Made by a program: the position numbers and the translations under genes
Notes under the pieces: model-generated
The model's database searches: none
The model's input: the letters and a program-made list of their open reading frames with translations, nothing else
Told to the model about the DNA's origin: nothing
Assembly (NCBI GenBank): GCA_036785375.1
Contig: JAWMAR010000070.1
Coordinates: 4,526,001-4,590,000 of the forward strand
Direction: 5' to 3'
Source of the DNA: Leucoraja ocellata
Lineage: Eukaryota
Length of the DNA: 64,000 bases
Shown here: positions 41,211 through 64,000 of the stretch, piece by piece
Layout of the letters: each line of letters starts with the position of its first letter
Numbering within the stretch: position 1 is the stretch's first letter

Positions 41211-41749
41211 ACCATATAACATATAACCATATAACCATATAACAATTACAGCACGGAAACAGGCCATCTCGGCCCTACAAGTCCATGCCGAACAAATTTT
41301 TTCCCCTTAGTCCCACCTGCCTGCACTCGTACCATAACCCTCCATTCCCTTCTCATCCATATGCCTATCCAATTTATTTTTAAATGATACCAATGAACCT
41401 GCCTCCACCACTTCCACTGGGAGCTCATTCCACACCGCCACCACTCTCTGCGTAAAGAAGTTCCCCCTCATATTACCCCTAAACGTCCGTCCCTTAATTC
41501 TGAAGTCATGTCCTCTTGTTTGAATCTTCCCTATTCTCAAAGGGAAAAGCTTGTACACATCAACTCTATCTATCCCTCTCATCATTTTAAAGACCTCTAT
41601 CAGCTCCCCCCTTAACCTTCTGCGCTCCAGAGAATAAAGACCTAACTTATTCAACCTATCTCTGTAACTTAGTTGTTGAAACCCAGGCAACATTCTAGTA
41701 AATCTCCTCTGTACTCTCTCTATTTTGTTGACATCCTTCCGATAATTGG
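41211..41749 (-). mobile_element. CR1-clade LINE 3' fragment with (ATATAACC)n tail
   Basis: KIERVQRRFTRMLPG..GLYSLERRRLRGELIEVFK..FFTQRVVAVWNELP; empty site present in the three gene D copies. Confidence 0.92.
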
Positions 41750-42352
41750 GAAGCATGTTCATTTTCCCACGATGTGTGGGATGAGAAAGTGGAGAGCAGA
41801 GGTAATGGGAACTACTTAAAGAGGGGGAATAGTAAGGTGTCACTTACTGTAATGGCATGTTTCGTACAGATGAGTGGCCGAAGCTGAAACAATTCGCCCA
41901 AGTTCGACCTCAACAACATATGTACAACTGAAACATAACATCCCAACTTCTGTTCTGAGGGACAACATTGTCCACGCATTGGGTTATATTTATATGGAAC
42001 CTGCTGCCAGAGGAAGTTGTTGAGGCAGTTAGAATAATAGCATTTAAAATACATTTTGGACAGTTGCGTAGATTGGGATCATTGCGAGTGATAAGGGAGA
42101 AACGTGGACATATAGCTATGGCCTAGAAAGACATGTTGGTCGGCATGAATGAGCTGTTGTGATGGGCATCTTTCGATTCTCTATAACTCTAACCTTCTTC
42201 AGTTTCTGTGCTTCGCACACTCACAGAGATGTAGATGAGCCGGTGAGATATCAACCGGACGGTTCAGGCTGAGATAAAGGGTTGCCGAGATTCAGCATAC
42301 AGCATATTTAATTGTTCATACAGGTGAGTGAATGTTTGCTCCATTCCCACAG

Positions 42353-42672
42353 AACCGTTGTCTGCTCCTGTGCTCAGATATCTGTCACCAGCAAATGCCT
42401 CACGTCTCGGAGGCTCAGTGTCAGTGTCGTGTGAGTCTGTCCGTGGATCCCTTCCCATCAATTACGCATGGTGTGAGAGGAACGAGGATGGGTGTTCAAC
42501 GATCTTGTCTGGCAATCAACTGGATCTGAGTGTGAAATCCTCGGAGGTCGAGACCGTCAATATTACTGCACAGCCTCAAATAATCGTGGGACAACATATA
42601 GTGCAAGTCTCAAGGTGAAAGTCTTCAAAGGAGCAGGAACGTGCAGTTATGTGACAGAAATGAACAATACAG
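42353..42672 (+). pseudogene. Gene C internal C2 exon with 1-nt deletion
   Basis: CTGAG-TGTGAA versus CTGAGTTGTGAA in gene D (near 42530); 320 nt. Confidence 0.9.
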
Positions 42673-43784
42673 GTGAGTGTTATTTTCCCGTGGGAATATT
42701 GTTTCATAATTCCTCTGGTGTTCTTGTAGCTGCTGCTTTTCACCTTGTGGTGATGGTCGTGGGTTTCTAGGTATTTACATGCGGCATCATTGCAGCCACC
42801 GTGAGCTCATGGTGTAAAATGTGGGAGTTTGTTTGGGGGACTGGCAAATAATTGCCTGTTGCTTTCACCTGGGAGGTGTTGAGCTTCAAAAGGAGATAGA
42901 GACCGGCACTTATCACAACGGGTTGAGAACATTCCATCAAATGTCTGCCTTCTGCCTTAAAATGGTTTTCTGGCTGCCGTTAAAGATCTCACAGTCACTT
43001 TGAGACAGAGAAAGCACCAAATGCATTCTTTTTGGATCCATCATCATTTAAAACCAAGGATGAAGAATTTCATCATCATGATCATGATTTTAACTCTGTT
43101 AATTTGTGAGAGTCACTGGAATTCCAGTAATCTCACAAAATTTAGTTGTATTCTACTTGGCCGTCACTCCATCAGGTATAACCCTTACATTTGTCAAAGA
43201 GAATTTTGGAATGAAAATCCCGGTAGGTGTGGAGACGCTCACAGCCCAGAAGAGAGTGTGAATGGTTTACATCAGCGAGACCAAGTGCAGCCAAGGCCAG
43301 TGCATCTTAAACTATTTCAGTGTCATTCACTCATGAGTCTTTATCACAAAATTTCATCAGTTTGAGAAGCACTGGCCTAGGCCACAGTTTCGCTTGTGCT
43401 TGGTCTGTCTTGACCCAGAATCGCGCTTGATAGACACCCCATCCTCAACCTCCCCAGCTGATGTAGAGCAGCAGCAGTTTACACCATCTGCTCGATGCAC
43501 TGCAGCAACTCATCAATAATCCCTAGACAGCGCCTTCCAATTGAAACAGGCTCCGTGTTCAATGCATCATTCTTTACCATTCACACCCACATTGGCTGGG
43601 AAGCGCTTTGGAACGACCTGTACAGGTGGTGAGGGATATTGTACAGTATCTGTCTCTCATCGTAATCTAGGTGGAATTCAACACAGCTAAGAAAATGATT
43701 GGGCGGACTCCCTTGTATACTAGAATGTGTATGTTTGTGAAAGGCTAATTTTGCTCTTCAATTTATCAAAGATGTTTGCTTCAG

Positions 43785-44090
43785 TTTCAGGTGCACTGTG
43801 GGCTGAGAGCGAAGTAAGAGGGGTTGTGGGAAGAGGGATCACAATCGATTGTCACTATGCAGCAGTGTACCGCTCACACACAAAATACTGGTGCCGTGGG
43901 ACAAGTCGCCAGTGTACACATGTAGGTGAAACAAATGGGAAGAGCGGAAGAACGTCAATCACAGATAACCCGGCACGAGGAATATTTACTGTGACTGTGG
44001 AGGATCTTCACTCTGCTGATACAGGATGGTACAGTTGTGGAATTACTACTGGCGAACCAACATTTAAAGTATATCTCCAAGTATCTGAAG
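43785..44090 (+). CDS. Gene C V2 exon (intact)
   Basis: ITIDCHY..KYWC..QC..GWYSC; 306 nt, phase 1/1. Confidence 0.92.
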
Positions 44091-45049
44091 GTAGGTTTCT
44101 CAATGAGTGACTTTATGTCTCCACTTTGGCAACGCATAAAACATTTGTTAGGTGGGAATCTGGTGCACAGTTCTGGTCGCCGCTTTATAAAACAAAAGAT
44201 GTGGAAGGTTTGGAGAGGTTACAGAAAATGTCACCGGGATATTTAGTTGTAGTTTACAAATGCAACATGGAAACGGATCCTTCGGCCCACCGAGCCCACA
44301 CTGACTAGCGATCACACTAGTTCTATGTTATTCCACTTCCCCATTCGCTCCCTACACACAATTCTACAATACCGTCATTCACACACATCATTAGTTCAAC
44401 AGTATCACCATCAACAATTTTATACAAGGAAATTTAAACTTTGTTGAGAGTGTTACTGTTGCACTAATGAGGTGTTTGAATATTGGTATTGTAGAATTGT
44501 GGCAGAGTTTCAGATTACAAATACTGCAAATTCTGGAAATATTGAACAAATAGAGATGGTGCTGCTGTGTACTGGTCCAGTGGCTGACATGGTAGTTCTT
44601 TCAGAGGGGAGGATGGGGAGCCAACGAGATGTACAAATCTGGTAAATGGATTGTGAGGAGAAGGAACTTTCTGACAGGCAATTTGGCTGTCGCTTTGAAA
44701 TGTAGCATCTGAGTAGCTGACATTGTCCTCATCTGTACTGGAGTGTGTCCATGTTGATTCCCTTCAAAATTGCGCTCCAGCATACACAGTTTGATTTTAA
44801 TTAGACAAATGGGCAGCATCCTTGTTGTTTTCAATGCCTAACAGTGTTGCATAAACGATGCTCCCTTTTCCTGCTGGTAATTCCTGAAATGTATAAGAGA
44901 ATCCAAGATGTGTCTGATGATTTGTCTGATTTGTGTTCAGTTTTAGTTGGATAGGGTGCAGAATAGATTTACAAGGGTGTTGCGATGACTTGAGGGCCCG
45001 ACTTCGAGGGACGGGTTATAGACAATAGACAATAGACAATAGAAAATTG

Positions 45050-45468
45050 AGCAGACTAGGACATTATTTCGTGGAGTGCAGTAGGAAGAAGGATGATCTT
45101 ATGGCAGCTACAAAATCATGTGATGAATAGATCGAGTAAATGCACAGTCTTTTGCCCCGAGTAGGGGAATCGAGAACCAGAGGACATAGTTTTAAGATGA
45201 GGGGGGAATGATTTAACAAGAACCTGGGGAGTAACGTTTTTACACAATGGTTGGTAGGTATATGAAACGAACAGCCGACAGATGTAGTTATGGCAGGTAC
45301 TATCACAACATTTAAGAATAATTTGGACAGGTACATGAATAGTATAGGTTTAGGGGGTTAAGGGCCAAGCAAGGACAGGTGGAACTAGTGCAGATTGGGA
45401 GTGTTGGTCAGTGCGGGCAGGTTGGACTGAAAGGCCTGTTTCTACGCTGTATGACTCTATGACTCTAA
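45050..45468 (+). mobile_element. CR1-clade LINE 3' fragment, degenerate
   Basis: CR1 RT C-terminus, ends in (TATGACTC)n tail. Confidence 0.75.
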
Positions 45469-45591
45469 GTAGATGGTTGGGTCAGATTCCAACCAGGGAG
45501 CTCTGGCTAAGATACTGAGATGGTGGATATTGGCGAGTGTTTGATTTTATGATGTTCACTCAGTGTCTGACTGTTTGCTCCTTTCCCACAG

Positions 45592-45912
45592 AACCCGTGT
45601 CTGTTCCTGTGCTTGGATTTCTGTCACCAGCCAATGACTCCTGTCTCGGGGGCTCAGTGACAGTGTCCTGTGAGTCGGTCCGGGGATCGCTTCCCATTAG
45701 CTACATCTGGTATGAAAAGACCCCATCTGGGGATTCAAAGATTTCAGACAACAATGCCCTGGATCTACATTGTCAATCCTTCAAACACCAGCACCATCAA
45801 TATTTCTGCACAGCCTCAAATCAACATGGATCAAAATCCAGTGAAATGGTCAACGTGTCCATCTCCAGCAGTGACGTGCCCTGCAGTTTCCTAATAAAAA
45901 TCAACAGCACTG
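45592..45912 (+). CDS. Gene C membrane-proximal C2 exon (intact)
   Basis: EPVSVPVLGF..SCLGGSVTVSCES..QYFCTASN; 321 nt. Confidence 0.92.
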
Positions 45913-46388
45913 GTAAGTAGTGGAGGGGATGAGGAGAAGAAGGGGAAGTGGGGGCGGGGTGGTTCATAAAATCACGTGATAAAAGCAGTAATAGACCATT
46001 CAATCATGGCTGATGTATCTTCCCCTCTTCACCCCATTCTCCTGCCTTTTCCCCAAAGCCCCGACACCCTGAAATCCATGAACTTTATTTACTTAACTTG
46101 TCGAGATTAAAATGATGGAATTATGGCCCATTTGTCAATACTTGGTTGCTGGGCTCCAGAATTAGATTTCCCAGTGCTGGTGTAGGCCAGCTTCCCTGCT
46201 AGAACTTCCTCTTATGTTTACACAGCTATAAGCTAGGTATCTGGTGACATCAGTCCAAGCACTTTCACTTTCCGTCATCATCTCCACATGGCCACTCAAA
46301 TGTGGGACGGGATCAGTAAATCTGGCCACAATAAAATCCGAGACGACGGTATTAGATTTGGTCCACTGTGTGAATGTTGTGTATTCAG

Positions 46389-46458
46389 TACCATCGATAC
46401 TAATCCCATTTACCAGCACCTCGTCCATTGTGGCAATGCAGATACCTCCACCTTCTAG
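46389..46458 (+). CDS. Gene C candidate stalk exon (VPSILIPFTSTSSIVAMQIPPPS); ancestral start probably 46290
   Basis: Phase 1 to 2 fits the flanking exons; ends AG|GT like other stalks; 5' boundary uncertain. Confidence 0.45.
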
Positions 46459-47440
46459 GTTTAAAAATATTTATTGATTGCCTTGAAACATCCTGCTCCA
46501 AAAATTAACCATATGTTCTCCACTTTTACACATATGTGCCGTGCACAATTTATCAAAAAAGACCCCATCTATGCTGCTCAGAGTTTTGCACATCTGTAAT
46601 AGGTTTCCCCTTCCTCGCCTATCCTGCATGGACTTTTATAAAATCCCTATCTGGATTTTGAAGGTAGATAAAAATAAGAAGGAACTGCAGATGCTGGAAA
46701 ATTCGAAGGAAGCTAATCGACCATGTCTAAGGAAGGGTCTCGACCCGAAACGTCACCTATTGCTTCTCTTCATAGGTGCTGCCTCACCCGTTGAGTTTCT
46801 CCAGCATTTTTGTCCACCTTCGATTTTTCCAGCACCTCCAGTTCCTTTTTAAAGATATACTAATAGCTGGTGTTTTGATTGGGAATGCTTTAATGGGGGG
46901 GAAAGTTGTGCCTTCCTTTCACTGACATTAAATGTTGTGAGAGTATTGATCTGAATTCACAGAGGCACAGCCTGTAGAATCACAGCCTCACAACGCCACG
47001 ACCCTGGTTCATTAGGTGCTGTCTACGTGTGGTCTGCATGTTTTGCCTTAAAATTGTGGTAGTTTCATTTAAATGCTCCAATTTCCTCCCAGCTCCCTTC
47101 CACCATTAGCATTGATCCTTTTGTATTATTCCTGTCTATCCACATGGATTTTATTATGATCTTCCTTGCAGCTGCATATTCTTTCTTCCAGTGTATTACA
47201 CTGTTCTTTGTATCCTTCCACATCCCCAGTTTCCCTCTCCCGTGGCTCTTAGTCTGAAGAAGGTCTCGACCCAAAACATCACCCATTCCTTCTCTCCAGA
47301 GATGCTGCCTCTTCTGCTGTGTTTCTCCCGCATTTTATATCTATCTACTCTGTATTCACTGTATTCACTGCTCCTCATGATTTATTTCTCACTTCTCCGA
47401 ATCCATTTAACCGTGTAATCTCTCATTCCCAGTCTTGCAG

Positions 47441-47602
47441 CCATGCTCCAGCAATGACGTCAGTAATTGGTGATCGTGAGTTTTCCCCCTCATGCCCCCC
47501 CCCCCCCCCCTGTCCAACACCCGTTCTTTCTCCAACCTGATCTCCATTGACTCTGCTGCTTCGCCCCGCTCCACTTCACCAAGATGATGAAGCAAATAAC
47601 AG
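47441..47602 (+). CDS. Gene C mini-exons 47441-47475 (HAPAMTSVIGD) and 47584-47602 (DEANN)
   Basis: Phases 2 to 1 and 1 to 2; counterparts in the pseudogene at 19941-19963 and 20504-20522 (19 nt). Confidence 0.6.
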
Positions 47603-47670
47603 GTAAATGTTTCAAAGATAAACCGTCTCGTTTTCTCCCAGTGATTCTGTATCTCTTGCCCTTTGCCCAG

Positions 47671-47761
47671 TTACATCTCATGGAAAGTGGGGCGCTGGCT
47701 GTTCTTTCTCGTGCTTGTGATCTGGAGTATCTCAACCGCGGTGCTCACAAGAGGCTCTAGG
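47671..47761 (+). CDS. Gene C transmembrane exon with Arg (YISWKVGRWLFFLVLVIWSISTAVLTRGSR)
   Basis: 91 nt, gcccag| acceptor and G|GTAGGT donor; Arg near the N-terminal TM boundary as in ITAM-adaptor-coupled receptors. Confidence 0.85.
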
Positions 47762-48380
47762 GTAGGTTTCATTGTCATCATGTTCATTAAATATAGCAGC
47801 AGAATTAGGCCATTCAGCCCATCATATCTAATCCGCCCCAATCACTGCTAATCTATACCTTCCCTCTCGATCCCGTTCCTGTGGCTTCTCCCCATAGCCC
47901 TTGTCATCCTTATGTATCAAGAATATCAAAATATCCGCCTTAAAAATATCAATAGATTTGGATAGATACAAAAATGCTGGAGTAACTCAGCGGATCTGGC
48001 AGCATCTCCGGTGTGAAGTGATTTGGCCTCCACAGCCTCCTGTGGCAATAAAATCCATAGATTCACTACCCTCTGCCCTAAGCAATCCCTTCCCTTCGCC
48101 GAATGTTTCCAAACGGTTTCCATTAACGCTTTCAAATATCCTGTGAATTGATAGAAACAAAAACCGTACACGTTTTCGTACCCTGAAGTTAAACCAAATC
48201 TCTATGTAGATGATATCACGAGGTTTTGTCAGGTTGTACGTGTGCAGGGTGGATTTCTGTGCCCGGTGTGGATTCTTTGGAGTCCATCTTCCAGACATCA
48301 ATGTGTTGGGAGTGGTCGGGTCAAATAAAGCGTGGTTCCCACTGTCAGTCAGTCTGATGACCTCACATTGTCTTTTGCAG

Positions 48381-48428
48381 AGACGCGATGAGCTAGAACC
48401 TCGCCATTCGACCCACGAATTACAATGA
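48381..48428 (+). CDS. Gene C terminal exon (RRDELEPRHSTHELQ*), short tail without Tyr
   Basis: tcttttgcag| acceptor, phase 0; AATAAA at about 48568 and 48621. Confidence 0.65.
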   Translation, partial: RRDELEPRHSTHELQ

Positions 48429-50802: not shown

Positions 50803-52248
50803 AGGGTAGTGTTAATGTGCGGCGATCGCAGGTCAGTGTAGACTCGATGGGCTGAAGGGCCTGATTCCGCGCTGTATCTCTACACTAAACTAAACTAAAC
50901 TAAACTAGTGGAAAGTCTATTCTTGTGCAGAACAAAATGGTTAAGTTGCAGCTTGCAAAGGGCGGGGTGTGAAACTGCAAATACATTGTGTTGCTTTCCT
51001 CAGTCTGACTTGTGACTGTAACCCCGCCCATGAAGGAACTGTGGAGGATGTTGTTTGGAAATAAGAAATGGTGACCTGCAAAAATGAAGTAACCGCCATA
51101 AAGTTAGGAAAGATTCAAGGATTGCTTTGGGTAAAATGTCCCACTGACAAAGATAAATATTATCTTCTATCAGCCAATAGAATGCACGTGAACATAACTC
51201 TGATAATTTATTAGCTCTGCGTTGCAAAGAAGACAAGTTAACAATTCTATTCACCTTGTATATTCTACCTTGCTTTAACTTCACTAAGTGTATCACTTTG
51301 CCCTTGTTTGAGTTACATTACACATGTCAGTTACATTCCACATCCCGCTTTCCCAGCTGATCTCCATCCTGTGATAATTCTAGACAAAATTCTTCACAGT
51401 CCACTACACCATTAATTGTCATTTACAAAACATGAATATCATGACAATAGTGTTTCAAAGTTGGAATTAAATAGTTGATGTAGAGAGAAGAGGATCAAAC
51501 TCCAATTAACCTCAGCTGATTTCGGGTCAAAAGCCCCTACTTCCTAACGCCAGCTTCCTGTTTTGCCTCTTGTCACCGGCAATATGCCAAAACAAAAGTT
51601 CCAATGATTACATTTTTGATCTGCCGATCCACTTACAAAATCATCAAGAGGGAACGATCCGGAAGTGTACACATCTTAGAAGTATCTACTCTTCTAAATG
51701 TCGTATTTTAACCAACGTATCATTGTTTACATGAAGGGTCCCGACCCGAAACGTCACCTATCAATTTTCTCCAGGGGTACTGCCTGGCCCGCAGAGTTCC
51801 TCCTATCACTATTCAGCGTTCACAGACTCTGAGTACAGAGATAACCGCCGCTCCATCCTTATGGATACGTCACACTTGACGAAGTGGCTGAAGCAGCTGC
51901 AATACCAACGTGTAACGGGCACTTGGACAGGTCCATGGATAGGGAAGGTTTGGGGAGATATGGATCAAATTTGACCAACTTTGATGAGCATATTGGTTTA
52001 ACGCGTTGGGGAGAAGGGCCTGCTTCCCGCTGTATGACTCTGTGATCATCTGACCCAACCATTTGCTAAATATAACCCTGAGCCTTTCACACTGTAACGT
52101 GTCGAGCTGCTACTGGCTCGCTGTGGTTCTCGATCTGACTTCCTGTTCCCTTCTTCCTCATTGCTATTTGAGAGATGCGGATGTATCTGCGAGCTCAGAG
52201 CTGAGCGACAGACAGACAAGTGCTGGCCTTGTCACTGTGGATAAAACA

Positions 52249-55200
52249 ATGTGGATTCCCATTCTTCTCATCTCCTCGCTACCCGGTGAGTGAAAGCCAG
52301 ATCTTGATATTCCAATGATCAATGTTAGTTGGGGTCCCGTGCACCCTTTCCACAGCAGAGATGGTTAAGTGAGTGTAGACATGTAATGGGGCAGATATAT
52401 TGTAACCCGTCCGTCCTCTGTCCTCAGTCAGGGCGTTGTAAAGGCGGTGAATGTCTAAACACGGGTCCGGCCCAGTGTCGGTTGAGAGATGAATGTTGGC
52501 AGCGCAGCCGGCGGCACCGCCAATGAAATAGCAAAGTGGGGTCTTTCTGTAGGGTGAGAGGCCGGGCACCGCCTGGGATTGGGAAGTGAACCCAAATTGT
52601 ACTGATCCGGGGACAGAACACTGACACAACTGGTTCAATAACAGCACTCCCTGCACTTCAGACCGGAGACATTGGCCGTGAAGCAATATGACACATCATG
52701 GAACGCTCTAAGTTTTCTTTCATGTTATCTTCAAAATGTATCTATTTTCATTAAGCTGTTCATTTTCTCTCCATCTGAAAGTTTCTCCCCTCAGTTTCAG
52801 GTGCAATGTGGGGAGAGAGGGAGGTAAGAGGAGTTGTGGGAAGAGCGATCACAATCGATTGTCACTATGCAGCAGGGTACCGCTCATACACAAAATACTG
52901 GTGCCGTGGGTGGACTATCCAATGTACAGTTTTAGTGGATACAAATGGACAACACGGACGGAGTGGAAGAGTGTCAATCACAGATAACCCGGCACGAGGA
53001 ATATTTACTGTGACTGTGGAGGATCTTCAGTCTGGAGATACAGGATGGTACAGATGTGGAATTGATACAGGTGGCACGGATCCATTCTTTACCGTACATC
53101 TCCAAGTATCTGACGGTACGTTTCGCAGCGATTTTCTTGAAGTCTCCACTGAAATGCCTGATCCATGTTTTCACCGGGAAGTGTCACATCAAGTGGGATG
53201 CTCAGTACATTTCCCTGCCTCTGAACTGTAAAAACGTCACCCTGTCAGAGGTTTGCATTCCCACTCAAACTAATGATCCGAGAGGTACAAATCAGCGAGA
53301 AACAAGTGTTGCTGGTGGTCTGAACACCCGGAGAATCATAAACAGGGAATGTGTCCCCAGAACTCAACAGACTGCGTTCAGTGCTCCCGGGGCAGAGCAG
53401 CCCGCTCCCCGCCCCCACCTCAGGGATCTGCCACTTTCTCCCCCACCGCGCGCGCTCTCTCTCTCTCTCCATCTGCCCGCCAATGCGCCCACACCCCCCT
53501 GCAGCCACTGTCCACCCACCGCCCGGCAGCCAGCCAGCCTCTCCACCCGGACATTTCCCTGGTGGGAAGGAGAATAATTCATCTTTCGCCCCATCAGCCG
53601 TCGCACACAGTATATAATCCTCCAACATTTTCGCCACTTCCATCGGAATCCCACAACTAGCCACATATTTCCATCTCCACCGCTTTCTCCTCTCCGAAGA
53701 GACCGTTCCCTCCGCAACTCCCTGGTCAACTCGTCCTTTCCCACTCAAACCACCCCGTCCCCAGGTACCTACAACTGCAGCAGATACAACACCTGGCCCT
53801 ATACCTCCTCTGTTCACTCCAACAGTCTTTTCGGGTGAAGCAGAGGTTCACTTGAATCTTCTCTAAACTCTTCTACTATATCCGCTGTTCCAGGTGTGAA
53901 CAAGATGGGAGACCAAGCGCAGACTCGGCGATCGTTTCGCTGAACAACTCCGATCGTTCTACCTCGGCCTACGCTAATTCCCGTTTGCTAAACACTAACT
54001 CCCCTTCCCATTCCCAAACTTACCTTTCTGTCCTGGACCTCCTCCTCTGTCAGAGTGAGGCCAAACGCAAATTGGAGGAACAGCGCCTCATATTTCGCTT
54101 GGGCAGCTTACAACCCAGCGGTTTAAATATTGATTTCTCAAACTTCAAGTAACCGTTGTTGTACCCCTGTCTCAATCCCGCCCTAGTTCTCCATTTAGAT
54201 TCACTGTCCTCTTCATTATATTTTACAGAGTGTATGCCTCGTTGTCACCTTCCCTTCGTCTGACAATGATCCATTCTGCATTTTCGTTTAACATTGTCAA
54301 CTTTTAGCACTTGTTTTCCATCCTTACTCTTCCATTACTCTTCTGTCACCCTAGACTTGACTCTCAGGCTGCAGAAGGGTCTCGACCCGATTCTTCACCC
54401 ATTCCTTCTCTCGAGAGATGCTGCCTGCTCCGCTATGATACTCCAGCCTAGTGTGTCTAGCTGAAAGGGATCGTTATTAGTTTTGGCCTTTAATTTCCAA
54501 GGCTATGAATAGGGATTTTGGTACGCTGGTCTTCATCAGTGAGAACATTCAGAACATAATCTGAGATAATATGCTTCAGACGTGCAGATGTTGAGTCCAC
54601 ACTTTGGGAATTGTGTTCAGCTTTAGTCCGTCAGCTCCAAGAAAAGTGCCGTTGAGGTGGACAGCGTGCAGAAAGGTTTTAGGGCGACGCTGCCTGGACA
54701 GGATGGGATTGACGCAGGGAGCGATTGGACAAACTCAGACTTCATTCCTTGGTGTGGAAATGATTGAGCGAGGAACTTATAGAAATGTATCAATCACGAG
54801 AAGCATGTTCATTTTCCCACGATGTGTGGGATGAGAAAGTGGAGGACAGACGTAATGGGAACTAGTTAAAGAGGGGAGAATAGTAAGGTGGACAGTTGCG
54901 TAGATTGGGGTCATTGCGAGTGATAAGGGAGAAACGTGGACATATGGAAATGGCCCAGAAAGACATGTTGGTCGGCATGAATGAGCTGTTGTGATGGGCA
55001 TATTTCGGTTCTCTATAACTCTAACCTTCTCCAGTTTCTGGGCTTCGCACACTCACAGAGATGTAGATGAGCCCGTGAGATATCAACCGGACGGTTCAGG
55101 CTGAGATAAAGGGCTGCTGAGATTCAGCATGTGTTTGGTTTTTAACTGTTCATACAGGTGACTGAATGTTTGCTCCATTCCCACAGAACCGGCGTCTGCT

Positions 55201-58200
55201 CCTGTGCTCAGATATCTGTCATCAGCAAATGCCTCACGTCTCGGAGGCTCAGTGTCAGTGTCGTGTGAGTCTGTCAGTGGATCCCTTCCCATCAATTACG
55301 CATGGTGTGAGAGGAACGAGCGTGGGTGTTCAACGATCTTGTCTGACAATCAACTGGACCTGAGTTGTGAAATCCTCGGAGGTCAACATCGTCAATATTA
55401 CTGCACAGCCTCAAATAATCATGGGATAAAATACAGTGAAATACTCAACGTGAAAGTCTTCAAAGGAGCAGGAACGTGCAGTTATGTGACAGAAATGAAC
55501 AATACAGGTGAGTGTTATTTTCCCGTGGGAATATTGTTTCACAATTCCTCTCGTGTTCTTGTAGCTGCTGCTTTTCACCTTGTGGTGATGGTCGTGGGTT
55601 TCTAGGTATTTGCAGGCGGCATCATTGCAGCCACCGTGAGCTAATGGTGTAAAATGTGGGAGTTTGTTTGGGGGACTGGCAAATAATTGCCTGTTGCTTT
55701 CACCTGGGAGGTGTTGAGCTTCAAAAGGAGATAGAGACCGGCACTTATCACAACGGGTTGAGAGCATTCCATCAAATGTCTGCCTTCTGCCTTAAAAATG
55801 ATTTTCTGGCTGCAATTAAAGATCTCACAGTCACTTTGAGACAGAGAAAGCACCAAATGCATTCTGTTTGGATCCATCATCATTTAAAACCAAGGATGCA
55901 GAATTTCATTATCATGTTCATGATTTTAACTCTGTTAATTTGTGAGAGTCACTGCAATTCCAGTAATCTCACAAAATTTAGGTGTATTCTACTTGGCCGT
56001 CACTCCATCATGTATAACCCTTAAATTTGTCAAAGAGAATTTTGGAATGAAAATCCCGGTAGGTGTGGAGACGCTCACAGTCCAGAAGAGAGTGTGAATG
56101 GTTTACATCAGCGAGACTGAGTGCAGCCAAGGCCGGTGCATCTTAAACTATTTCAGTGTCATTCACCCTTGAGTCTTTATCACAAAATTTCATCAGTTTG
56201 AGAAGCACTGGCCTAGGCCACAGTTTCGCTGAACACTTGTGCTTGGTTTGTCATGACCCAGAATCGCACTTGATAGACACCCCATCCTCAACCTCCCCCA
56301 CTGATGCAGAGCAGCAGCAGTTTGCACCATCTGCACGATGCACTGCAGCAACTCACCAAGACTCCCTAGACAGCGCCTTCCAATTGCAACAGGCTCCGTG
56401 TTCAATGCATCATTCTTCACCATTCACACCCACATTGGCTGGGAAGCGCTTTGGAACGACCTGTGCAGATGGTGAGGGACGGTGTACAGTATCTGTCTCT
56501 CATCGCAATCTAGGTGGAATTGAGCACAGTTAAGAAAATGATTGGGCGGAATCCCCTGTACACATTGATGTATACTATAATGTATATGCTTGTGAAAGGC
56601 TAATTTTGCTCTTAAATTTATGATAGATTTTACATTCAGTTTCAGGTGCACTGTGGGCTGAGAGCGAAGTAAGAGGGGTTGTGGGAAGAGCGATCACAAT
56701 CGATTGTCACTATGCAGCAGTGTACCGCTCACACACAAAATACTGGTGCCGTGAGACAAGTCACCAGTGTACACATGTAGTGGAAACAAATGGGAAACAT
56801 GGACAGAGCGGAAGAGTGTCAATCACAGATAACCTGGAACGAGGAATATTTACTGTGACTGTGGAGATTCTTCACTCTGGAGATACAGGATGGTACAGAT
56901 GTGGAATTACTACATCTGTCGAACCAACATTTAAAGTACATCTCCAAGTATCTGAAGGTAGGTTTCTCAATGAGTGACTTTATGTCTCCACTTGGGCATC
57001 CGCACAAACCATTTGTTAGTGGGAGTCTGGTGCACAGTTCTGGTCCCCGCTTTATAAAACAAAAGATGTGGAAGCTTTGGAGAGGTTACAGAAATTGTCA
57101 CCGGGATATTGAGTTATAGTTTACAAATGCAACATGGAAACGAATCCTTTGGCCCACCGACTCCACACCGACTTGAGTTCACCGGTCACACTAGTTCTAT
57201 GTTGTTCCACTTTCCCATTCGCTGGCTACACACAATTCTACAATACCGGCATTCACGCACCCCAATAGTGCAACACTAGATGGGTGACCAAGCGTAGACC
57301 CGGAGAAACATGACATGAGTCCCCAGAACTCAACAGACTGCGTTCGGTCCTCCCAGAGCAGGCCAGCCCATTCCCCGCCCACACCTCAGAGATCACGCCC
57401 CCCCCCCCCCCCCCACCCCGATCCCCACCTCGCTCTCTCTCTCTCACCCTCCCTCTGACCCGTCAACTCGTCCTTTCCCACCCGAACCACCCGTGCCCAG
57501 GTACCTTCCCCGACAACTGCAGCGGATGCAACACCTGTCTCAATACCTCCTCCGTCCATTCCGTCCAAGGACTCCAACAGTCTTTTCAGGTGAGGCAGAG
57601 GTTCATTGCATCTCCTCTATCCCCATCTATTCTATCCGCTGTTCCAGCTGTGAACAAGTAGATACAGTAGATGGGAGACCAAGCGCAGACTCGGCGATCG
57701 TTTCGCTGAACAACTCCGCTCAGTCTGCCTCGGCCTACGCTAATTCCGGTTTGCTAAACACTTTAACCCCCCTCCCATTCCCAAATTCACCTTTCTGTCC
57801 TGGACCTCCTCCACTGTTAGAGTGAAGCCAAACGCAAATTGGAGGAACAGCGCCTCATATTTCGCTTAGGCAGCTTACAACCCAGCGGTTTAAATATTGA
57901 CTTCTCAACCTTCAAAGTAACCGTTGTTGTACCCCTGTCTCAATCCCGCCCTAGTTCTCCATTTACATTCACTGTCCTCTTCATTATATTTTACTGATTG
58001 TATGCCTCGTTGTCACCTTCCCTTCGTCTGACAATGATCCATTTTGCATTTCCGTTTAACATTGTCAACTTTTAGCACTTGTTTTCACTCCTTACTCTTC
58101 CACTACTATTCTGTCACCCTAGACTTGACTCTCAGGCTGAAGAAGGGTCTCGACCCGATTCTTCACCCATTCCTTCTCTCGAGAGATGCTGCCTGCCCTG

Positions 58201-61200
58201 CAGAGTTACTCCAGCATTTTGTGTCTATCTTAAAGGGATCGTAATTAATTTTCGCCTTTAAATTCCAAGGCATTGAATATGGTTTTTGGTACGCTGGTCT
58301 TCATCAGTGAGAACATTCAGAACATAATTTGAGATAATCTGCTTCAGACGTGCAGATGTTGAGTCCACACTTTGGGAATATGTTCAGCTTTAGTCCCTCA
58401 GCTCCAAGAAAAGTGCCGTTGAGGTGGACAGCGTGCAGAAAGGATTTAAGGCGACGGTGCGTGGACAGGATGGGATTGACGCAGGGAGCGATTGGACAAA
58501 CAGACTTCATTCCTTGGTGTGGAAATGATTGAGCGAGGAACTTATAGAAATGTATCAATCACGAGAAGCATGTTCATTTTCCCACGATGTGTGGGATGAG
58601 AAAGTGGAGGACAGAGGTAATGGGAACTATTTAAAGAGGGGGGAATAGTAAGGTGTCATTGACTGTAATGGCATGTTTTGTACAGATGAGTGGCCGAAGC
58701 TGAACACAATTCGCCCAAGTTCAACCTCAACAACATATGTACAACTGAAACATAACATCCCAACTTCTGTTCTGAGGGACAACATTCGCTACACATTGGG
58801 TGATATTTATATGGAACCTGATGCCAGAGGAAGTTGTTTAGGCAGTCAGAATAATAGCATTTAAAATACATTTTAGGACAGTTGCGTAGATTAGGATAAT
58901 TGCGAATGATAAGGGAGAAACGTGGACATATAGCTATGGCCTAGAAAGACATGTTGGTCGGCATGAATGAGCTGTTGTGATGGGCATCTTTCGGTTCTCT
59001 ATAACTCTAAAATTCTCCAGTTTCTGGGCTTCGCACACTCACAGAGATGTAGATGCGCCGGTGACATATCAACCGGACGGTTCGGGCTGAGATAAAGGGC
59101 TGCTGAGATTTAGCATGTGTTTGGTTTTTAACTGTTCATACAGGTGACTTAATGTTTGCTCCATTCCCACAGAACCCGTGTCTGCTCCTGTGCTCAGATA
59201 TCTGTCACCAGCAAATGCCTCACGTCTCGGAGGCTCAGTGTCAGTGTCGTGTGAGTCTGTCAGTGGATCCCTTCCCATCAATTATGCATGGTGTGAGCAG
59301 AACGAGCGTGGGTGTTCAACGATCTTGTCTGGCAATCAACTGAATCTGAGTTGTGGAATCCTCGGAGGTCAACACCGTCAATATTACTGCAGAGCCTCAA
59401 ATAATCGTGGGACAAAACCCAGTGAAATACTCAAAGTGAAAGTCTTCAAAGGAGCAGCAAGGTGCAGTTATGTGACAGAAATGAACAATGCTGGTGAGTG
59501 TTATTTTCCCGTGGGAATACTGTTTCACAATTCCTCTCGTGTTCTTGTAGCTGCTGCTTTTCACCTTGTGGTGATGGTCGTGGGTTTCTAGGTATTTGAA
59601 GGCGGCATCATTGCAACCACCGTGAGCTCATGGTGTAAAATGTGGGAGTTTGTTTGGGGGACTGGCAAATAATTGCCTGTTGCTTTCACCTGGGAGTTGT
59701 TGTGCTTCAAAAGTAGATAGAGACCGGCACTTATCACAACGGGTTGAGAGCATTCCATCAAATGTCTGCCTTCTGCCTTAAAATGATTTTCTGGCAGCCG
59801 TTAAAGATCTCACAATCACTTTGAGACAGAGAAAGCAACAAATGTCACTGGAATTCCAGTAATCTCACAAAATTTAGGTGGATTCTACTCGGCCGTCACT
59901 CCATCATGTGTAACCCTTACATTTGTCAAAGAGAATTTTGGAATGACACTCCCGGTAGGTGTGGAGACGCTCACACTCCAGAAGAGAGTGTGAATGGTTT
60001 ACATCAGCGAGACCAAGTGCAGCCAAGGCCGGTACATCTTAACTATTTCAGTGTCATTCACCCTTGAGTCTTTATCACAAAATTTAATCAGTTTAAGAAG
60101 CACTGGCCTAGGCCACAGTTTCACTGAACACTTGTGCTTGGTCTGTCATGACCCAGAATCGCACTTGATAGACACCCCATCCTCAACCTCCCCCGCTAAT
60201 GCAGACCAGCAGCAGTTTGCACCATCTGCACGATGCTCTGCAGCAACTCACCAAGACTCCCTAGACAGCGCCTTCCAATTGCAACAGGCTCCGTGTTCAA
60301 TGCATCATTCTTCACCATTCACACCCACATTGGCTGGGAAGCGCTTTGGAAGCAGATGGTGAGGGACGGTGTACAGTATCTGTCTCTCATCGCAATCTAG
60401 GTGGAATTCAACACAGTTAAGAAAATGATTGGGCGGACTCCCCTGTACACATTGATGTATACTATAATGTATATGCTTGTGAAAGGCTAATATTGCTCTT
60501 CAATATATGAAAGATGTTTCATTCAGTTTCAGGTGCACTATGGGCTGAGAGCGAAGTAAGAGGGGTTGTGGGAAGAGCGATCACAATCGATTGTCACTAT
60601 GCAGCAGTGTACCGCTCACACACAAAATACTGGTGCCCTGGGACAAGTCGCCAGTGTACACATGTAGGTGAAACAAATGGGAAACATGGACAGAGCGGAA
60701 GAGTGTCAATCACAGATAACCTGGAACAAGGAATATTTACTGTGACTGTGGAGGATCTTCACTCTGGAGATACAGGATGGTACAGATGTGGAATTACTGC
60801 ACCTGGCGAAGCAACATTTCAAGTACATCTCCAAGTATCTGAAGGTAGGTTTCTCAATGAGTGACTTTATGTCTCCACTTTGGCATCCGCACAAACCATT
60901 TGTTAGATGGGAGTCTGGTGCACAGTTCTGGTCCCCGCTTTATAAAACAAAAGATGTGGAAGCTTTGGAGAGGGTGCAGAAAATGTCACTGGGATATTTA
61001 GTTGTAGTTTACAAATGCAACATGGAAACGAATCCTTTGGCCCACCGAGTCCTCACCGACTTGAGATCACCGGTCACACTAGTTCTATGTTGTTCCACTT
61101 TCCCATTCGCTGGCTACACACAATTCTACAATACCGGCATTCACGCACCTCAATAGTGCAACACTAGATGGGTGACCAAGCGTAGACCCGGAGAAACATG

Positions 61201-64000
61201 ACATGAGTCCCCAGAACTCAACAGACTGCGTTCGGTCCTCCCAGAGCAGGCCAGCCCATTCCCCGCCCACACCTCAGAGATCACGCCACCCCCCCCCCCC
61301 CCCCCCACCCCGATCCCCACCTCGCTCTCTCTCTCTCACCCTCCCTCTGACCCGTCAACTCGTCCTTTCCCACCCGAACCACCCGTGCCCAGGTACCTTC
61401 CCCGACAACTGCAGCGGATGCAACACCTGTCCCTATACCTCCTCCGTCCATTCCGTCCAAGGACTCCAACAGTCTTTTCAGGTGAGGCAGAGGTTCACTT
61501 GCATCTCCTCTAGCCTCATCTATTCTATCCGCTGTTCCAGGTGTGAACAAGTAGATACAGTAGATGGGAGACCAAGCGCAGACTCGGCGATCGTTTCGCT
61601 GAACAACTCCGCTCAGTCTGCCACGGCCTACGCTAATTCCGGTTTGCTAAACACTTTAACCCCCCTCCCATTCCCAAATTCACCTTTCTGTCCTGGACCT
61701 CCTCCACTGTTAGAGTGAGGCCAAACGCAAATTGGAGGAACAGCGCCTCATATTTCGCTTGGGTAGCTTATAACCCAGCCGTTTAAATATTGACTTCTCA
61801 AACTTCAAGTAACCGTTGTTGTACCCCTGTCTCAATCCCGCCCTAGTTCTCCATTTAGATTCACTGTCCTCTTCATTATATGTTACAGATTGTATGCCTC
61901 GTTGTCACCTTCCCTTCGTCTGACAATGATCCATTCTGCATTTCCGTTTAACATTGTCAACTTTTAGCACTTGTTTTCACTCCTTATTTCTTCCATGACT
62001 ATTCTGTCACCCTAGACTTGACTCTCAGGCTGAAGAAGGGTCTCGACCCGATTCTACCCCCATTCCTTCTCTCGAGAGATGCTGCCTGCCCTGCAGAGTT
62101 ACTCCAGCATTTTGTGTCTATCTTAAAGGGATCGTAATTAATTTTCGCCTTTAAATTCCAAGGCATTGAACAGGGTTTTTGGTACGCTGGTCTTCATCAG
62201 TGAGAACATTCAGAACATAATTTGAGATATTCTGCTTCAGACGTGCAGATGTTGAGTCCACGCTTTGGGAATTATGTTCAGCTTTAGTCCCTCAGTTCCA
62301 AGAAAAGTGCCGTTGAGGTGGACAGCGTGCAGAAAGGTTTTAGGGCGACGCTGCCTGGACAGGATGTGATTGACGCAGGGAGCGATTGGACAAACTCAGA
62401 CTTCATTCCTTGGTGTGGAAATGATTGAGCGAGGAACTTATAGAAATATATCAATCACGAGAAGCATGTTCATTTTCCCACGATGTGTGGGATGAGGAAG
62501 TGGAGGACAGAGGTAATGGGAACTATTTAAAGAGGGGGGAATAGTAAGGTGTCACTTACTGTAAATGGCATGTAAGGTGTCACTTACTGTAATGGCATGT
62601 TTCGTACAGATGAGTGGCCGAAGCTGAACACAATTCGCCCAAGTTCGACCTCAACAACATATGTACAACTGAAACATAACATCCCAACTTCTGTTCTGAG
62701 GGACAACATTGTCCACGCATTGGGTGATATTTATATGGAACCTGCTGCCAGAGGAAGTTGTTGAGGCAGTTAGAATATTAGCAGTTAAAATACATTTTGG
62801 ACAGTTGCGTAGATTGGGATCATTGCGAGTGATGAGGGAGAAACGTGGACATATGGCTATGGACTAGAAAGACATGTTGGTCGGCATGAATGAGCTGTTG
62901 TGATGGGCATATTTCGGTTCTCTATAACTCTAACCTTCTTCGGTTTCTGGGCTTCGCACACTCACAGAGATGTAGATGAGCCGGTGAGATATCAACCGGA
63001 CGGTTCGGGCTGAGATAAAGGGCTGCTGAGATTTAGCATGTGTTTGGTTTTTAACTGTTCATACAGGTGACTGAATGTTTGCTCCATTCCCACAGAACCC
63101 GTGTCTGCTCCTGTGCTCAGATATCTGTCACCAGCAAATGCCTCACGTCTCGGAGGCTCAGTGTCAGTGTCCTGTGCGTCTGTCAGTGGATCCCTTCCTA
63201 TCCGTTACACATGGTGTGAGAAGAACGAGCATGGGTGGTCAACGATCTTGTATGGCAATCAACTGGATCTGAGTTGTGAAATCCTCGCCGGCCAACACCG
63301 TCAATATTACTGCACAGCCTCAAATAATCATGGGACAAAATCCAGTGAAATACTCAACGTGAAAGTCTTCAAACGAGAAGGAACGTGCATTTATGTGACA
63401 GAAATGAACAATGCAGGTGAGTGTTAACTCATTCACCCTTGGGTGAACCATTCACCAGTTTAAGAAGCACTGGCCTAGGCCACAGTTTCGCTGAACACTT
63501 GTGCTTGGTCTGTCATGACCCAGAATCCCGCTTGAAAGACACCCCATTTTCAACCTCCCCCGCTGATGCAGAGCAGCAGCAGTTTACACCATCTGCACGA
63601 TGCACTGCAGCAACTCACCAAGACTCCCTAGACAGCGCCTTCCAATTGCAACAGGCTCCGTGTCCAATGCATCATTCTTCACCATTCACACCCACATTGG
63701 CTGGGAAGCGCTTTGGAACGACCTGTACAGGTGGTAAGGGACAGTGTACAGTAACTGTCTCTCATCGCAATCTAGGTGGAATTCAACACAGCTAAGAAAA
63801 TGATTGGGCGGAGTCCCTTGTATACTAGAATGTGTATGTTTGTGAAAGGCTAATTTTGCTCTTCAATTTATCAAAGATGCTTCCTTTAGTTTCAGGTGCA
63901 CTATGGGCTGAGAGCGAAGTAAGAGGGGTTGTGGGAAGAGCGATCACAATCGATTTTCACTATGCAGCAGTGTACCGCTCACACACAAAATACTGGTGCC
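52249..64000 (+). CDS. Gene D (partial): multi-domain MDIR-type receptor; leader 52249-52285, V1 52795-53115, C2 55187-55507, V2 56640-56957, C2 59173-59493, V3 60527-60844, C2 63096-63416, V4 63890 to window end
   Basis: All complete exons are open, phase 1/1 and GT-AG; no further leader, stalk or TM exon seen between modules. Confidence 0.85.
52795..53115 (+). CDS. Gene D V1 exon
   Basis: 321 nt; DCHY..KYWC..QC..WYRC. Confidence 0.94.
55187..55507 (+). CDS. Gene D C2 exon 1 (internal type)
   Basis: 321 nt; SRLGGSVSVSCES..WCERNERGC..YYC. Confidence 0.93.
56640..56957 (+). CDS. Gene D V2 exon
   Basis: 318 nt, intact motifs. Confidence 0.93.
59173..59493 (+). CDS. Gene D C2 exon 2 (internal type)
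   Basis: 321 nt, intact. Confidence 0.93.
60527..60844 (+). CDS. Gene D V3 exon
   Basis: 318 nt, intact motifs. Confidence 0.93.
63096..63416 (+). CDS. Gene D C2 exon 3 (internal type)
   Basis: 321 nt, open; one loop Cys replaced by Trp. Confidence 0.92.
63890..64000 (+). CDS. Gene D V4 exon (truncated by window end; B-strand Cys replaced by Phe)
   Basis: tttag|TTTCAGGTGCACTATGG..ATC GAT TTT CAC TAT..AAA TAC TGG TGC. Confidence 0.85.

What the first reader, a model, noticed from the sequence alone, without database searches (positions are those of the whole stretch)
52249..64000. Gene D: one leader feeding a tandem array of at least 7 Ig exons, with potential for combinatorial splicing
Seen: one leader followed by (V-C2)x3-V. 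Every Ig exon is phase 1/1 and every internal V still begins with the signal-peptide completion VSGALWA. So the leader, or any C2, can splice in frame to any downstream V and give a correctly cleaved N-terminus. The V copies differ mainly in loops (RGWTIQC, RETSHQC, PGTSRQC; DTGGTDPF, TTSVEPT, TAPGEAT). As I recall, described skate MDIRs have up to six Ig domains, so this would exceed them. Inference: a germline receptor that could vary its length and distal binding domain by splice choice.
Basis: partly seen in the sequence, partly recalled or inferred. Interest (0 to 1): 0.8.

Follow-up and report, generated by a model that had tools for sequence, protein, structure and literature searches.

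The report
Skate MDIR receptor gene, repeated Ig cassettes
This is a skate immune-receptor gene of the known MDIR family whose outer part has been lengthened by tandem copying of a two-exon antibody-like cassette; the idea that it shuffles these cassettes by splicing has no support so far.

Summary
The anatomy is confirmed. One leader exon (52249-52285) is followed by V-C2-V-C2-V-C2-V. Six exons are complete and intact (318-321 nt, phase 1/1, AG/GT sites). The seventh runs off the window.

The exons sit in tandem cassettes of 3.4-3.9 kb that are about 95% alike, introns included.

The gene belongs to the known skate MDIR family. Its V domains resemble pIgR/CD300 and its C2 domains resemble FCRL5. 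V2 is 89.5% identical to cloned MDIR3.

The 'signal-peptide tail' VSGALWA on internal V exons is not special to this gene. Cloned MDIR3 and MDIR5 carry it on 3 of 3 internal V domains, where it is a linker.

Phase 1/1 is the general rule for Ig exons. In 0 of 36 leader contexts among relatives does an internal-type V follow the leader.

RNA reads gave no exon junction and no read assignable to this gene, so combinatorial splicing is untested, not shown.

RefSeq models with 8 Ig domains, one leader and one membrane span already exist in rays and sharks.

The V copies differ mainly in two loops, and exons diverge faster than introns.

The scan noted the same splicing idea about 12 kb further on in this genome (s1-885404).

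Verdict: a new member of a known kind.

The parts
51170..52248 (+). 5' flank and untranslated part of the first exon, duplicated together with the gene
   Evidence: 51170-52391 is 87.0% identical to 37030-38269 upstream of gene C. 52054-52284 matches the translated 5' region in the L. erinacea model P0004 at 90.9%.
52249..52285 (+). Leader exon: ATG plus 37 nt encoding MWIPILLISSLP and the first base of the next codon, phase 1, donor GTGAGT
   Evidence: It is the only leader-like sequence in 52249-64000.
52795..53115 (+). V1, the distal-type V exon (321 nt, phase 1/1)
   Evidence: Pfam V-set, E 7.6e-15. Best solved-structure matches are pIgR and CD300. Sister to V1 of L. erinacea P0153 in the tree, support 99/90.
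55187..55507 (+). C2-1 exon (321 nt, phase 1/1)
56640..56957 (+). V2, internal-type V exon (318 nt), starts (V)SGALWA
   Evidence: Pfam V-set, E 2e-12. 89.5% identical to MDIR3 residues 337-441.
59173..59493 (+). C2-2 exon (321 nt)
   Evidence: Matches FCRL5 chain 9loc_A at E 4e-35 over 6 stretches.
60527..60844 (+). V3, internal-type V exon (318 nt)
   Evidence: 94.3% identical to the third V of L. erinacea P0153.
63096..63416 (+). C2-3 exon (321 nt)
   Evidence: 91.5% identical to the C2 of L. erinacea P0004.
63890..64000 (+). V4, first 111 nt only; the canonical B-strand Cys is replaced by Phe
   Evidence: The flank 63451-64000 is 93.6% identical to 43353-43895, the region before the last V of gene C.
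55948..63426 (+). Two tandem copies of the cassette, period about 3.9 kb (55948-59503 versus 59844-63426)
   Evidence: 94.8% identity over 3,594 aligned bases. Sliding identity is 0.885-1.000.
53400..54600 (.). Interspersed-repeat block inside the V-to-C2 intron, present again in cassette 2 (from about 57400 to at least 58199, the end of the laid stretch) and in cassette 3 by homology at 61354-62551
   Evidence: Summed word depth of 1e5-1e6 in three DNA runs, against a few hundred on the exons; most RNA reads laid fall here. 53725-54890 aligns to 57462-58655 and 61354-62551 at about 91%.

Best explanation
Gene D is a member of the elasmobranch MDIR family. These are receptors built from alternating pIgR/CD300-like V domains and FCRL-like C2 domains, and they sit in a large multigene cluster.

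Its ectodomain was lengthened by tandem duplication of a two-exon cassette (V + C2, 3.4-3.9 kb), most likely by unequal crossing-over between cassettes (inferred). The starting point would have been a leader-V-C2-V-C2' gene like the neighbouring gene C.

Because whole exons were copied, each internal V exon carries the few N-terminal residues that complete the signal peptide in V1. In the mature multi-domain protein these residues are simply the linker after the preceding C2.

The default product is inferred to be one long chain with all cassettes. By homology with gene C, that is 8 Ig domains once the C2' beyond the window is counted, followed by a stalk, a membrane span and a signalling tail outside the window. 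The closest annotated relative has three ITIM-like motifs.

The exons are kept intact while their loops and parts of C2 change fast, so the copies are probably selected for different binding surfaces.

Shown: exon anatomy, tandem cassettes, family membership, intact frames, loop-focused differences.

Inferred: a single full-length transcript, the 3' end, the crossing-over mechanism, the selection.
For: - Exons and splice sites.
- Only one leader and no membrane or tail exon inside the array.
- Cassettes are 94.8% alike over 3.6 kb, introns included.
- Gene C has the same leader-V-C2-V start at 87-94% identity, followed by C2' at 45591-45911 and a membrane exon at 47669-47761.
- V exons match pIgR (E 9e-54, 4 stretches) and CD300. 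C2 exons match FCRL5 (E 4e-35).
- Named MDIR3 and MDIR5 are among the hits, and V2 is 89.5% identical to MDIR3.
- The tree puts V2 and V3 in the internal-V clade (99/95) and V1 with V1 of L. erinacea P0153 (99/90).
- P0153 reads VCVCVC, one membrane span, 3 ITIM-like motifs.
- Coherent 8-Ig models with one leader and one membrane span exist (P0159, P0163; P0156 has one membrane span but no matching leader start).
- Cloned MDIR3 and MDIR5 translate VSGA(L/V)WA on 3 of 3 internal V domains.
- No frameshift or stop in six exons. From intron indel density, 3.1 indels are expected between cassettes 2 and 3 and 0 are seen (P 0.045). Between cassettes 1 and 2, 4.6 are expected and 1 in-frame indel is seen.
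- Exon divergence 40/639 against intron 108/2681, p 0.0185.
- dN/dS 0.78-1.86.
- 7 of 11 V2/V3 differences fall in two loops.
Against: - No transcript evidence for this gene. In the RNA run (about 6% of it read) depth was 0 on the leader and V1. About 1-2 reads lay on C2-1 and V2. At the positions listed for them (55191, 55193, 55222, 55427, 55443, 56763), 5 of 6 show letters of other copies; 56763 is the V3-type G that all three DNA runs also carry; two further listed positions (55421, 55442) agree with the window. No exon-exon joint was listed.
- V4 lacks the canonical Cys. dN/dS near 1 also fits relaxed constraint. Neighbouring gene C has frameshifts. Part of the array could therefore be decaying.
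- The number of cassettes rests on this one assembly. The DNA runs available are short unitigs and cannot span a 3.9-kb unit.
- The 3' end was not seen.
- No protein in the databases searched is identical to any exon (best 94.3%), so the gene is not annotated as such.
- The loop test is post hoc.
Confidence: 0.6

Rival explanations
1. Splice-choice receptor. The leader, or any C2, is joined to different downstream V exons, so that one gene gives receptors of different length and different distal V.
For: - All joins are in frame.
- Internal V exons keep a plausible signal-peptidase region and a double AG acceptor 6 nt apart.
- This motif type is found on 97 of 233 internal V domains in a mixed set of cartilaginous-fish and more distant relatives.
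- Predicted isoforms X1 and X2 of R. longicauda differ by skipping one C2 exon and by use of the 6-nt tandem acceptor.
- L. erinacea X1 and X2 differ by one V-C2 module.
Against: - Phase 1/1 is generic for Ig exons.
- 0 of 36 leader contexts in relatives are followed by an internal-type V.
- Cloned MDIR3 and MDIR5 use the motif as a linker.
- The tree shows two position-specific V clades, distal and internal.
- L. erinacea X2 uses a different, 90-95% similar set of 3' exons, so it is not a simple skip.
- The isoforms are predictions.
- No junction reads were found.
- A search for short relatives of V2 found 2 proteins among 3 candidates, neither a leader-to-internal-V fragment.
Confidence: 0.15
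2. Partly dead array. The duplicated cassettes are recent, drifting copies, and some exons (V4 at least) are skipped or make the product non-functional.
For: - V4 has Cys to Phe at the core disulfide.
- dN/dS is 0.78-1.05 for the C2 exons.
- Gene C has 1-nt deletions in V1 and C2-1 (320 nt).
- The V exon at 19176-19499 has two stops.
- No RNA read is assignable to gene D.
Against: - Six of six complete exons keep frame, splice sites and the framework residues, despite 4-15% divergence.
- Indels are absent where 3-4.5 are expected.
- Differences cluster in loops rather than being spread evenly.
Confidence: 0.15
3. Assembly artefact. Divergent haplotypes or paralogues were stitched in tandem, and the true gene has fewer cassettes.
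For: - Immune gene clusters are prone to mis-assembly (general knowledge).
- The cassette count could not be checked with independent long reads.
- The three DNA runs differ from the window at many listed positions, so they are not the source individual.
Against: - No N or gap in 52249-64000.
- Cassettes differ by 3-8%, with private indels (30-50 bp) and a shorter last intron of 473 nt against 1033-1132 nt. This is more than typical allelic difference.
- Each C2 exon has many private substitutions.
- Gene C and many RefSeq models in other species have the same repeating V-C2 layout.
Confidence: 0.1

Closest known systems
Modular domain immune-type receptors MDIR3 and MDIR5 of the clearnose skate (UniRef entries, proteins P0166 and P0186; Cannon et al. 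2006, Immunogenetics 58:362. I saw only its reference-list entry in PMC3031540; its content is recalled)
   Same: - Same V and C2 domain types. V2 is 89.5% identical to MDIR3 337-441.
- Same leader sequence, MWIPILLISSLP.
- Same VSGA(L/V)WA start on internal V domains.
- Same clades in the tree.
   Different: - MDIR3 reads VVCVC (5 Ig domains) and MDIR5 reads VCVC (4 Ig domains). Gene D has at least 7 Ig exons in the order VCVCVCV.
- The membrane and tail parts of gene D were not seen.
Leucoraja erinacea RefSeq model 'polymeric immunoglobulin receptor-like isoform X1' (P0153, 803 aa)
   Same: - Closest annotated relative: V1 89.6%, V3 94.3% identical, and the V1 domains are sisters in the tree.
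- Same alternating layout.
   Different: - P0153 has three V-C2 modules (VCVCVC), one membrane span and three ITIM-like motifs.
- Gene D has at least one V more.
- No exon is identical, so it is a paralogue or the orthologue in another species or haplotype.
Polymeric immunoglobulin receptor and the CD300/CMRF35 family
   Same: The V exons are of this V type, with the extra C-C' cysteine pair (YWC...QC). Matches: pIgR E 9e-54, CLM-1 E 5e-23.
   Different: - pIgR has V-type domains only, and CD300 has a single V (established knowledge).
- Here V domains alternate with C2 domains that match FCRL5.
- The RefSeq name 'pIgR-like' is a similarity label, not orthology.
Length variation by tandem cassette duplication in other receptor genes, for example the long homologous repeats of human complement receptor 1 (recalled, not checked here)
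   Same: A multi-exon block encoding whole domains is repeated in tandem inside one gene, which gives a longer ectodomain.
   Different: The domain types differ. Whether cassette number varies between individuals is unknown here.

Membership tests
MDIR (modular domain immune-type receptors, elasmobranchs) | Sequence relationship to the named MDIR proteins | tested here: met
   MDIR3 and MDIR5 are among the 86 hits at E<=1e-30 of the search seeded with P0003. V2 is 89.5% and V3 88.6% identical to MDIR3 337-441. They fall in shared clades.
MDIR (modular domain immune-type receptors, elasmobranchs) | Ectodomain built from modules of different Ig subfamilies in variable number | tested here: met
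   The order V-C2-V-C2-V-C2-V comes from the exons. The two domain types are confirmed by Pfam and by solved-structure matches.
MDIR (modular domain immune-type receptors, elasmobranchs) | Membrane span with either a charged residue or an ITIM-bearing tail (some MDIRs have neither; recalled) | not testable with these tools
   The 3' end lies beyond the window.
MDIR (modular domain immune-type receptors, elasmobranchs) | Member of a large clustered multigene family | tested here: met
   Further V exons lie at 7267-7590 (-), 19176, 24419, 39187 and 43785 in the same window.
MDIR (modular domain immune-type receptors, elasmobranchs) | Expressed as mRNA | tested here: inconclusive
   One RNA run, about 6% of it read. 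There were a few sense-direction reads on C2 and internal-V sequence that carry letters of other copies, none on the leader or V1, and no joints.
Polymeric immunoglobulin receptor | Ectodomain of V-type domains only (2 to 5); binds polymeric Ig | tested here: not met
   Every second domain is a C2 that matches FCRL5 and not pIgR. Ligand binding was not tested.
CD300 / CMRF35-like molecules | A single V domain on a stalk | tested here: not met
   At least 4 V and 3 C2 exons follow one leader.
Fc receptor-like (FCRL) | Ectodomain of C2-type domains without pIgR-type V domains | tested here: not met
   The C2 exons match FCRL5, but they alternate with V-set exons.

The most novel reading that the evidence does not exclude
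The internal V exons keep a working signal-peptide end and a double acceptor because the leader is at times spliced directly to V2, V3 or V4. One germline gene would then give a small set of receptors with different distal binding domains and lengths. That would be a cassette-choice way of diversifying an innate receptor in a cartilaginous fish.
Probability: 0.1. Interest if true: 0.7.

Novelty: new member of a known kind. Interest (0 to 1): 0.3.

Why it matters
MDIRs are among the oldest known paired-type Ig receptors of jawed vertebrates, and in the literature I could reach they are described mainly from cDNAs. This locus shows at the DNA level how their 'modules' are added: a V + C2 exon pair is copied in tandem, introns included. 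The copies then diverge fastest in two V loops and in part of C2.

That gives a concrete and testable picture of how receptor length and binding surfaces change in this family. It also gives a defined place to look for copy-number differences between individuals.

It does not by itself show a new diversification mechanism.

Tried and rejected
**RNA test of the splice idea.** One call of the look-up of sequencing runs gave a single RNA run, of a differently coded organism. One call of read laying on 52200-58199 at 92% likeness gave too few exon reads and no joints. The DNA runs were short unitigs, useless for cassette order.

**Original MDIR paper and a review by the same group.** Neither is held. 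Three other literature searches found only one paper that mentions skate MDIRs, PMC3031540, of which I read passages. One search found nothing on this family. I therefore make no claim that MDIR genomic organisation is unpublished. Supplements were not opened.

**Short-fragment search for a leader-to-internal-V protein.** It found 2 proteins among 3 candidates, which is uninformative.

**AlphaFold model of V2 from a 6-row alignment.** Mean pLDDT was 52.4, too poor to use. I did no fold search and placed the loops by invariant landmarks instead.

**Very long RefSeq models as proof of long receptors.** I considered and rejected this. P0004 is a fusion of genes B and C of this locus. P0155, P0157 and P0162 hold two leaders. 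P0152 has no membrane span and has C2'-type domains in mid-chain. Only P0159 and P0163 (one leader, one membrane span) and P0156 (one membrane span; its N-terminus does not match the leader pattern) look coherent.

**Splice-site strength.** I compared sites by eye only, with no scoring model at hand, and drew no conclusion.

**Joined model.** All searches were exon by exon or used database proteins.

Full report
**What is there.** I read 52100-64000 and fixed the exon limits by script.

- The leader starts with ATG at 52249 and runs 37 nt to 52285 (donor GTGAGT), which leaves phase 1.
- Then follow V1 52795-53115 (321 nt), C2-1 55187-55507 (321), V2 56640-56957 (318), C2-2 59173-59493 (321), V3 60527-60844 (318), C2-3 63096-63416 (321), and V4 from 63890 to the end of the window.
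- All six complete exons are multiples of three, open, and flanked by AG and GT.
- V1 begins (V)SGAMWG. V2, V3 and V4 begin (V)SGALWA.
- Pfam calls the three complete V exons V-set (47.7-55.5 bits, cut-off 26). The C2 exons are weak generic Ig matches.
- Inside 52249-64000 there is no second leader and no detectable membrane or tail exon, so this is one gene start followed by an uninterrupted run of Ig exons.

**The repeat.** A self-comparison of the window shows that 55948-59503 and 59844-63426 are 94.8% identical over 3.6 kb. This is a tandem cassette with a period of about 3.9 kb that holds one V and one C2 exon with their introns.

- Cassette 1 is older in its V part. V1 is 85-87% identical to V2 and V3, and its V-to-C2 intron is about 80% identical to theirs. 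Its C2 exon and C2-to-V intron are 92-96% like the others.
- Identity along cassettes 2 and 3 runs from 0.885 to 1.000 per 200 columns. The lowest value is in the 3' two thirds of the C2 exon.
- The cassettes carry private indels, and the last C2-to-V intron is 473 nt against 1033-1132 nt.
- An upstream gene (gene C, 37030-44401) is 87-94% identical to the leader-V1-C2-V2 part of gene D. It goes on to a distinct membrane-proximal C2' (45591-45911), a membrane exon (47669-47761) and a last exon (48378-48425).
- The sequence before and into V4 (63451-64000) is closest to the region before the last V of gene C (93.6%).
- From this I infer that gene D arose from a gene C-like layout by amplification of the V-C2 cassette, and that V4 is followed, outside the window, by a C2' and the membrane part. 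An unchecked note of this scan (s1-885405) places a fossil tail exon 715 letters beyond the window's end. The same element lies about 530 nt after the last V of gene C (44623-44889, minus strand), which fits that inference.

**What family.** A whole-library HMMER search with V2 gave 2,359 proteins at E<=0.001, and 102 at E<=1e-30.

- The best hits are RefSeq models from skates, rays and sharks named 'polymeric immunoglobulin receptor-like', 'CMRF35-like' and 'Fc receptor-like 5'.
- Among the 86 hits at E<=1e-30 of a second search, seeded with P0003, are 'Modular domain immune-type receptor 3' and '5' of the clearnose skate.
- V2 is 89.5% identical to MDIR3 residues 337-441.
- Against solved structures, the V exon matches pIgR (E 9e-54, four stretches) and CD300/CLM-1 (E 5e-23). 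The C2 exon matches FCRL5 (E 4e-35, six stretches).
- A tree of 50 V domains from four skate species and the window has two starred clades. One is an internal, membrane-side V type (99/95) that holds V2, V3, the last V of gene C and the last V of MDIR3 and MDIR5. The other is a distal type that holds V1, which is sister to V1 of L. erinacea P0153 (99/90). V2 and V3 are not resolved as sisters.
- No database protein is identical to any exon of gene D (best 94.3%).
- The L. erinacea model P0004 matches genes B and C of this window at 94.7-98.1% in five of the six gene-B pieces (85.7% in the sixth). The window is therefore that locus in a very close relative or another haplotype.
- The membership test for MDIR is met on sequence, domain make-up and clustering. 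It is open on the membrane part and on expression.

**The signal-peptide tail.**

- The residues VSGA(L/V)WA are present on 3 of 3 internal V domains of the cloned MDIR3 and MDIR5. There they are translated between domains, so they serve as a linker.
- A motif of this type is found on 51 of 112 N-terminal and 97 of 233 internal V domains in the 223 proteins fetched. This is a mixed set that includes distant relatives.
- Their presence follows from copying whole exons. Phase 1/1 is the general rule for Ig-domain exons (established knowledge).
- Of 36 leader occurrences in the fetched proteins, none is followed by the internal V type (signature ESEV/ESDV with AAVYRSH). All are followed by a distal-type V (classed by eye). 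This is the opposite of what free leader-to-any-V splicing would give, with one caveat: gene models and representative proteins are a biased sample.

**Splice variation in relatives.**

- Predicted isoforms X1 and X2 of one R. longicauda gene differ by one C2 exon (107 residues) and by inclusion or not of the two residues VS at two V starts. That is use of the two AGs 6 nt apart that gene D also has.
- L. erinacea X1 (VCVCVC) and X2 (VCVC) share the first 328 residues. X2 then continues in a different, 90-95% similar C2'-membrane-tail set, so this is not a simple skip and may be a model across tandem genes.
- These are predictions. They show that exon skipping is plausible in the family, not that gene D does it.

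**RNA and DNA reads.** The look-up of sequencing runs listed 7 runs, none on record as an RNA holder, and one RNA run added by study. Read laying on 52200-58199 at 92% likeness read about 6% of that run.

- 886 reads were laid, nearly all on the interspersed repeats of the introns.
- Depth was 0 on the leader and V1, and about 0.9-1.7 on C2-1 and V2.
- Those exon reads came only from pairs whose first mate lies on the minus strand, which is the sense direction for the usual stranded libraries.
- At the positions listed for them (55191, 55193, 55222, 55427, 55443, 56763), 5 of 6 show letters found in other copies; 56763 is the V3-type G that all three DNA runs also carry; two further listed positions (55421, 55442) agree with the window.
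- No exon-exon joint was listed.
- So the family is transcribed in that sample, while nothing can be assigned to gene D and the splice question stays open.
- The three DNA runs are short unitigs that differ from the window at many positions. They neither confirm nor refute the cassette count.

**Selection.**

- Between cassettes 2 and 3, the exons differ at 40 of 639 sites and the introns at 108 of about 2,681 (Fisher p 0.0185; against the V-to-C2 intron alone, p 0.0010).
- dN/dS is 1.86 for V2/V3, 0.94-1.02 for V1 against V2 or V3, and 0.78-1.05 for the C2 exons. Counts are small.
- Seven of the 11 residues that differ between V2 and V3 lie in the 15 positions between Cys36 and Cys43 (C-C' loop) and between Cys87 and Phe97 (F-G loop, the CDR3-like loop) (p 7e-5). 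These loops were delimited after seeing the data.
- No indel or stop has hit the six exons. From intron indel density, about 3.1 are expected between cassettes 2 and 3 (P of none 0.045). Between cassettes 1 and 2, 4.6 are expected and one in-frame 3-nt indel is seen.
- Decay does occur nearby: gene C has 1-nt losses in V1 and C2-1, and the V exon at 19176 has two stops.
- Together this favours functional exons with fast-changing surfaces over drifting dead copies, but it does not prove it.

**Is seven or more Ig domains unusual?**

- Domain counts with profiles built from the window's exons give VVCVC for MDIR3 and VCVC for MDIR5.
- My recollection that the 2006 paper reports one to six domains could not be checked.
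- Among RefSeq models there are 8-Ig forms with one leader and one membrane span plus ITIM-like motifs (P0159 Mobula hypostoma, P0163 Stegostoma tigrinum), and P0156 (Pristis pectinata), which has one membrane span and ITIM-like motifs but an N-terminus that does not match the leader pattern.
- The 9-12-domain models look like fusions of neighbours or lack a membrane part.
- Gene D is therefore long for the family but not without precedent among predictions.

**Verdict.** This is a real, cleanly built tandem amplification of a V-C2 exon cassette inside a gene of the known MDIR family.

- Most likely it encodes one long receptor chain (confidence 0.6).
- The splice-choice reading is kept as the most novel reading not excluded (about 0.1-0.15).
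- Partial decay (0.15) and mis-assembly (0.1) remain possible.

**Limits.**

- The key paper is not held, and supplements were not consulted.
- One RNA run of a differently coded organism was the only transcript source.
All searches were exon by exon.

Noticed in passing
window 63890-64000: V4 has TTT (Phe) where V1, V2, V3 and the other four V exons read in this window have TGT, the B-strand cysteine of the core disulfide. It could be a real change, an allele or a base error. The rest of the exon is outside the window.
   Followed up: partly
window 19176-19499 (+): A further V exon of the family has two in-frame stop codons, so it is a pseudo-exon.
   Followed up: partly
window 39187-39505 and 42353-42672 (+): Gene C has a frame break in its V1, and its first C2 exon is 320 nt instead of 321. 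Its last V (43785-44090) is intact but 306 nt long, with 9-nt and 3-nt in-frame losses.
   Followed up: partly
window 44623-44889 (-): Antisense, stop-containing remnant of an ITIM-type tail exon lies in the intron after the last V of gene C. It matches the tails of P0153, P0166 and P0003 at E 0.006-0.023.
   Followed up: partly
window 24419-33797 and 37905-47717 (+): The L. erinacea RefSeq model XP_055511094.1 (P0004, 'uncharacterized LOC129708990') lines up with the exons of gene B and then of gene C of this window, running through the 5' untranslated region of gene C. It is probably a fused gene model.
   Followed up: partly
window 52054-52248 (+), also 37932-38126: The reading frame of the leader stays open for about 65 codons upstream of the ATG in both gene D and gene C. 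P0004 translates this stretch. It may be chance or may reflect read-through transcripts from the upstream gene.
   Followed up: no
window 59270-59469 versus 63193-63392: The 3' two thirds of the C2 exon differs at 23 of 200 sites between cassettes 2 and 3, while the flanking introns differ at 1.5-6.5%. This points to a local burst of change or a conversion tract from another copy.
   Followed up: partly
window 57396-57420 and 61290-61308: Long poly-C runs followed by CT-rich low-complexity sequence sit inside the repeat block of the V-to-C2 introns.
   Followed up: no
window 47669-47717 (+): The C-terminal peptide VTSHGKWGAGCFFSCL that ends models P0004 and P0005 maps onto the start of gene C's membrane exon in another frame. 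These models may therefore end in a frame-shifted reading of that exon.
   Followed up: no
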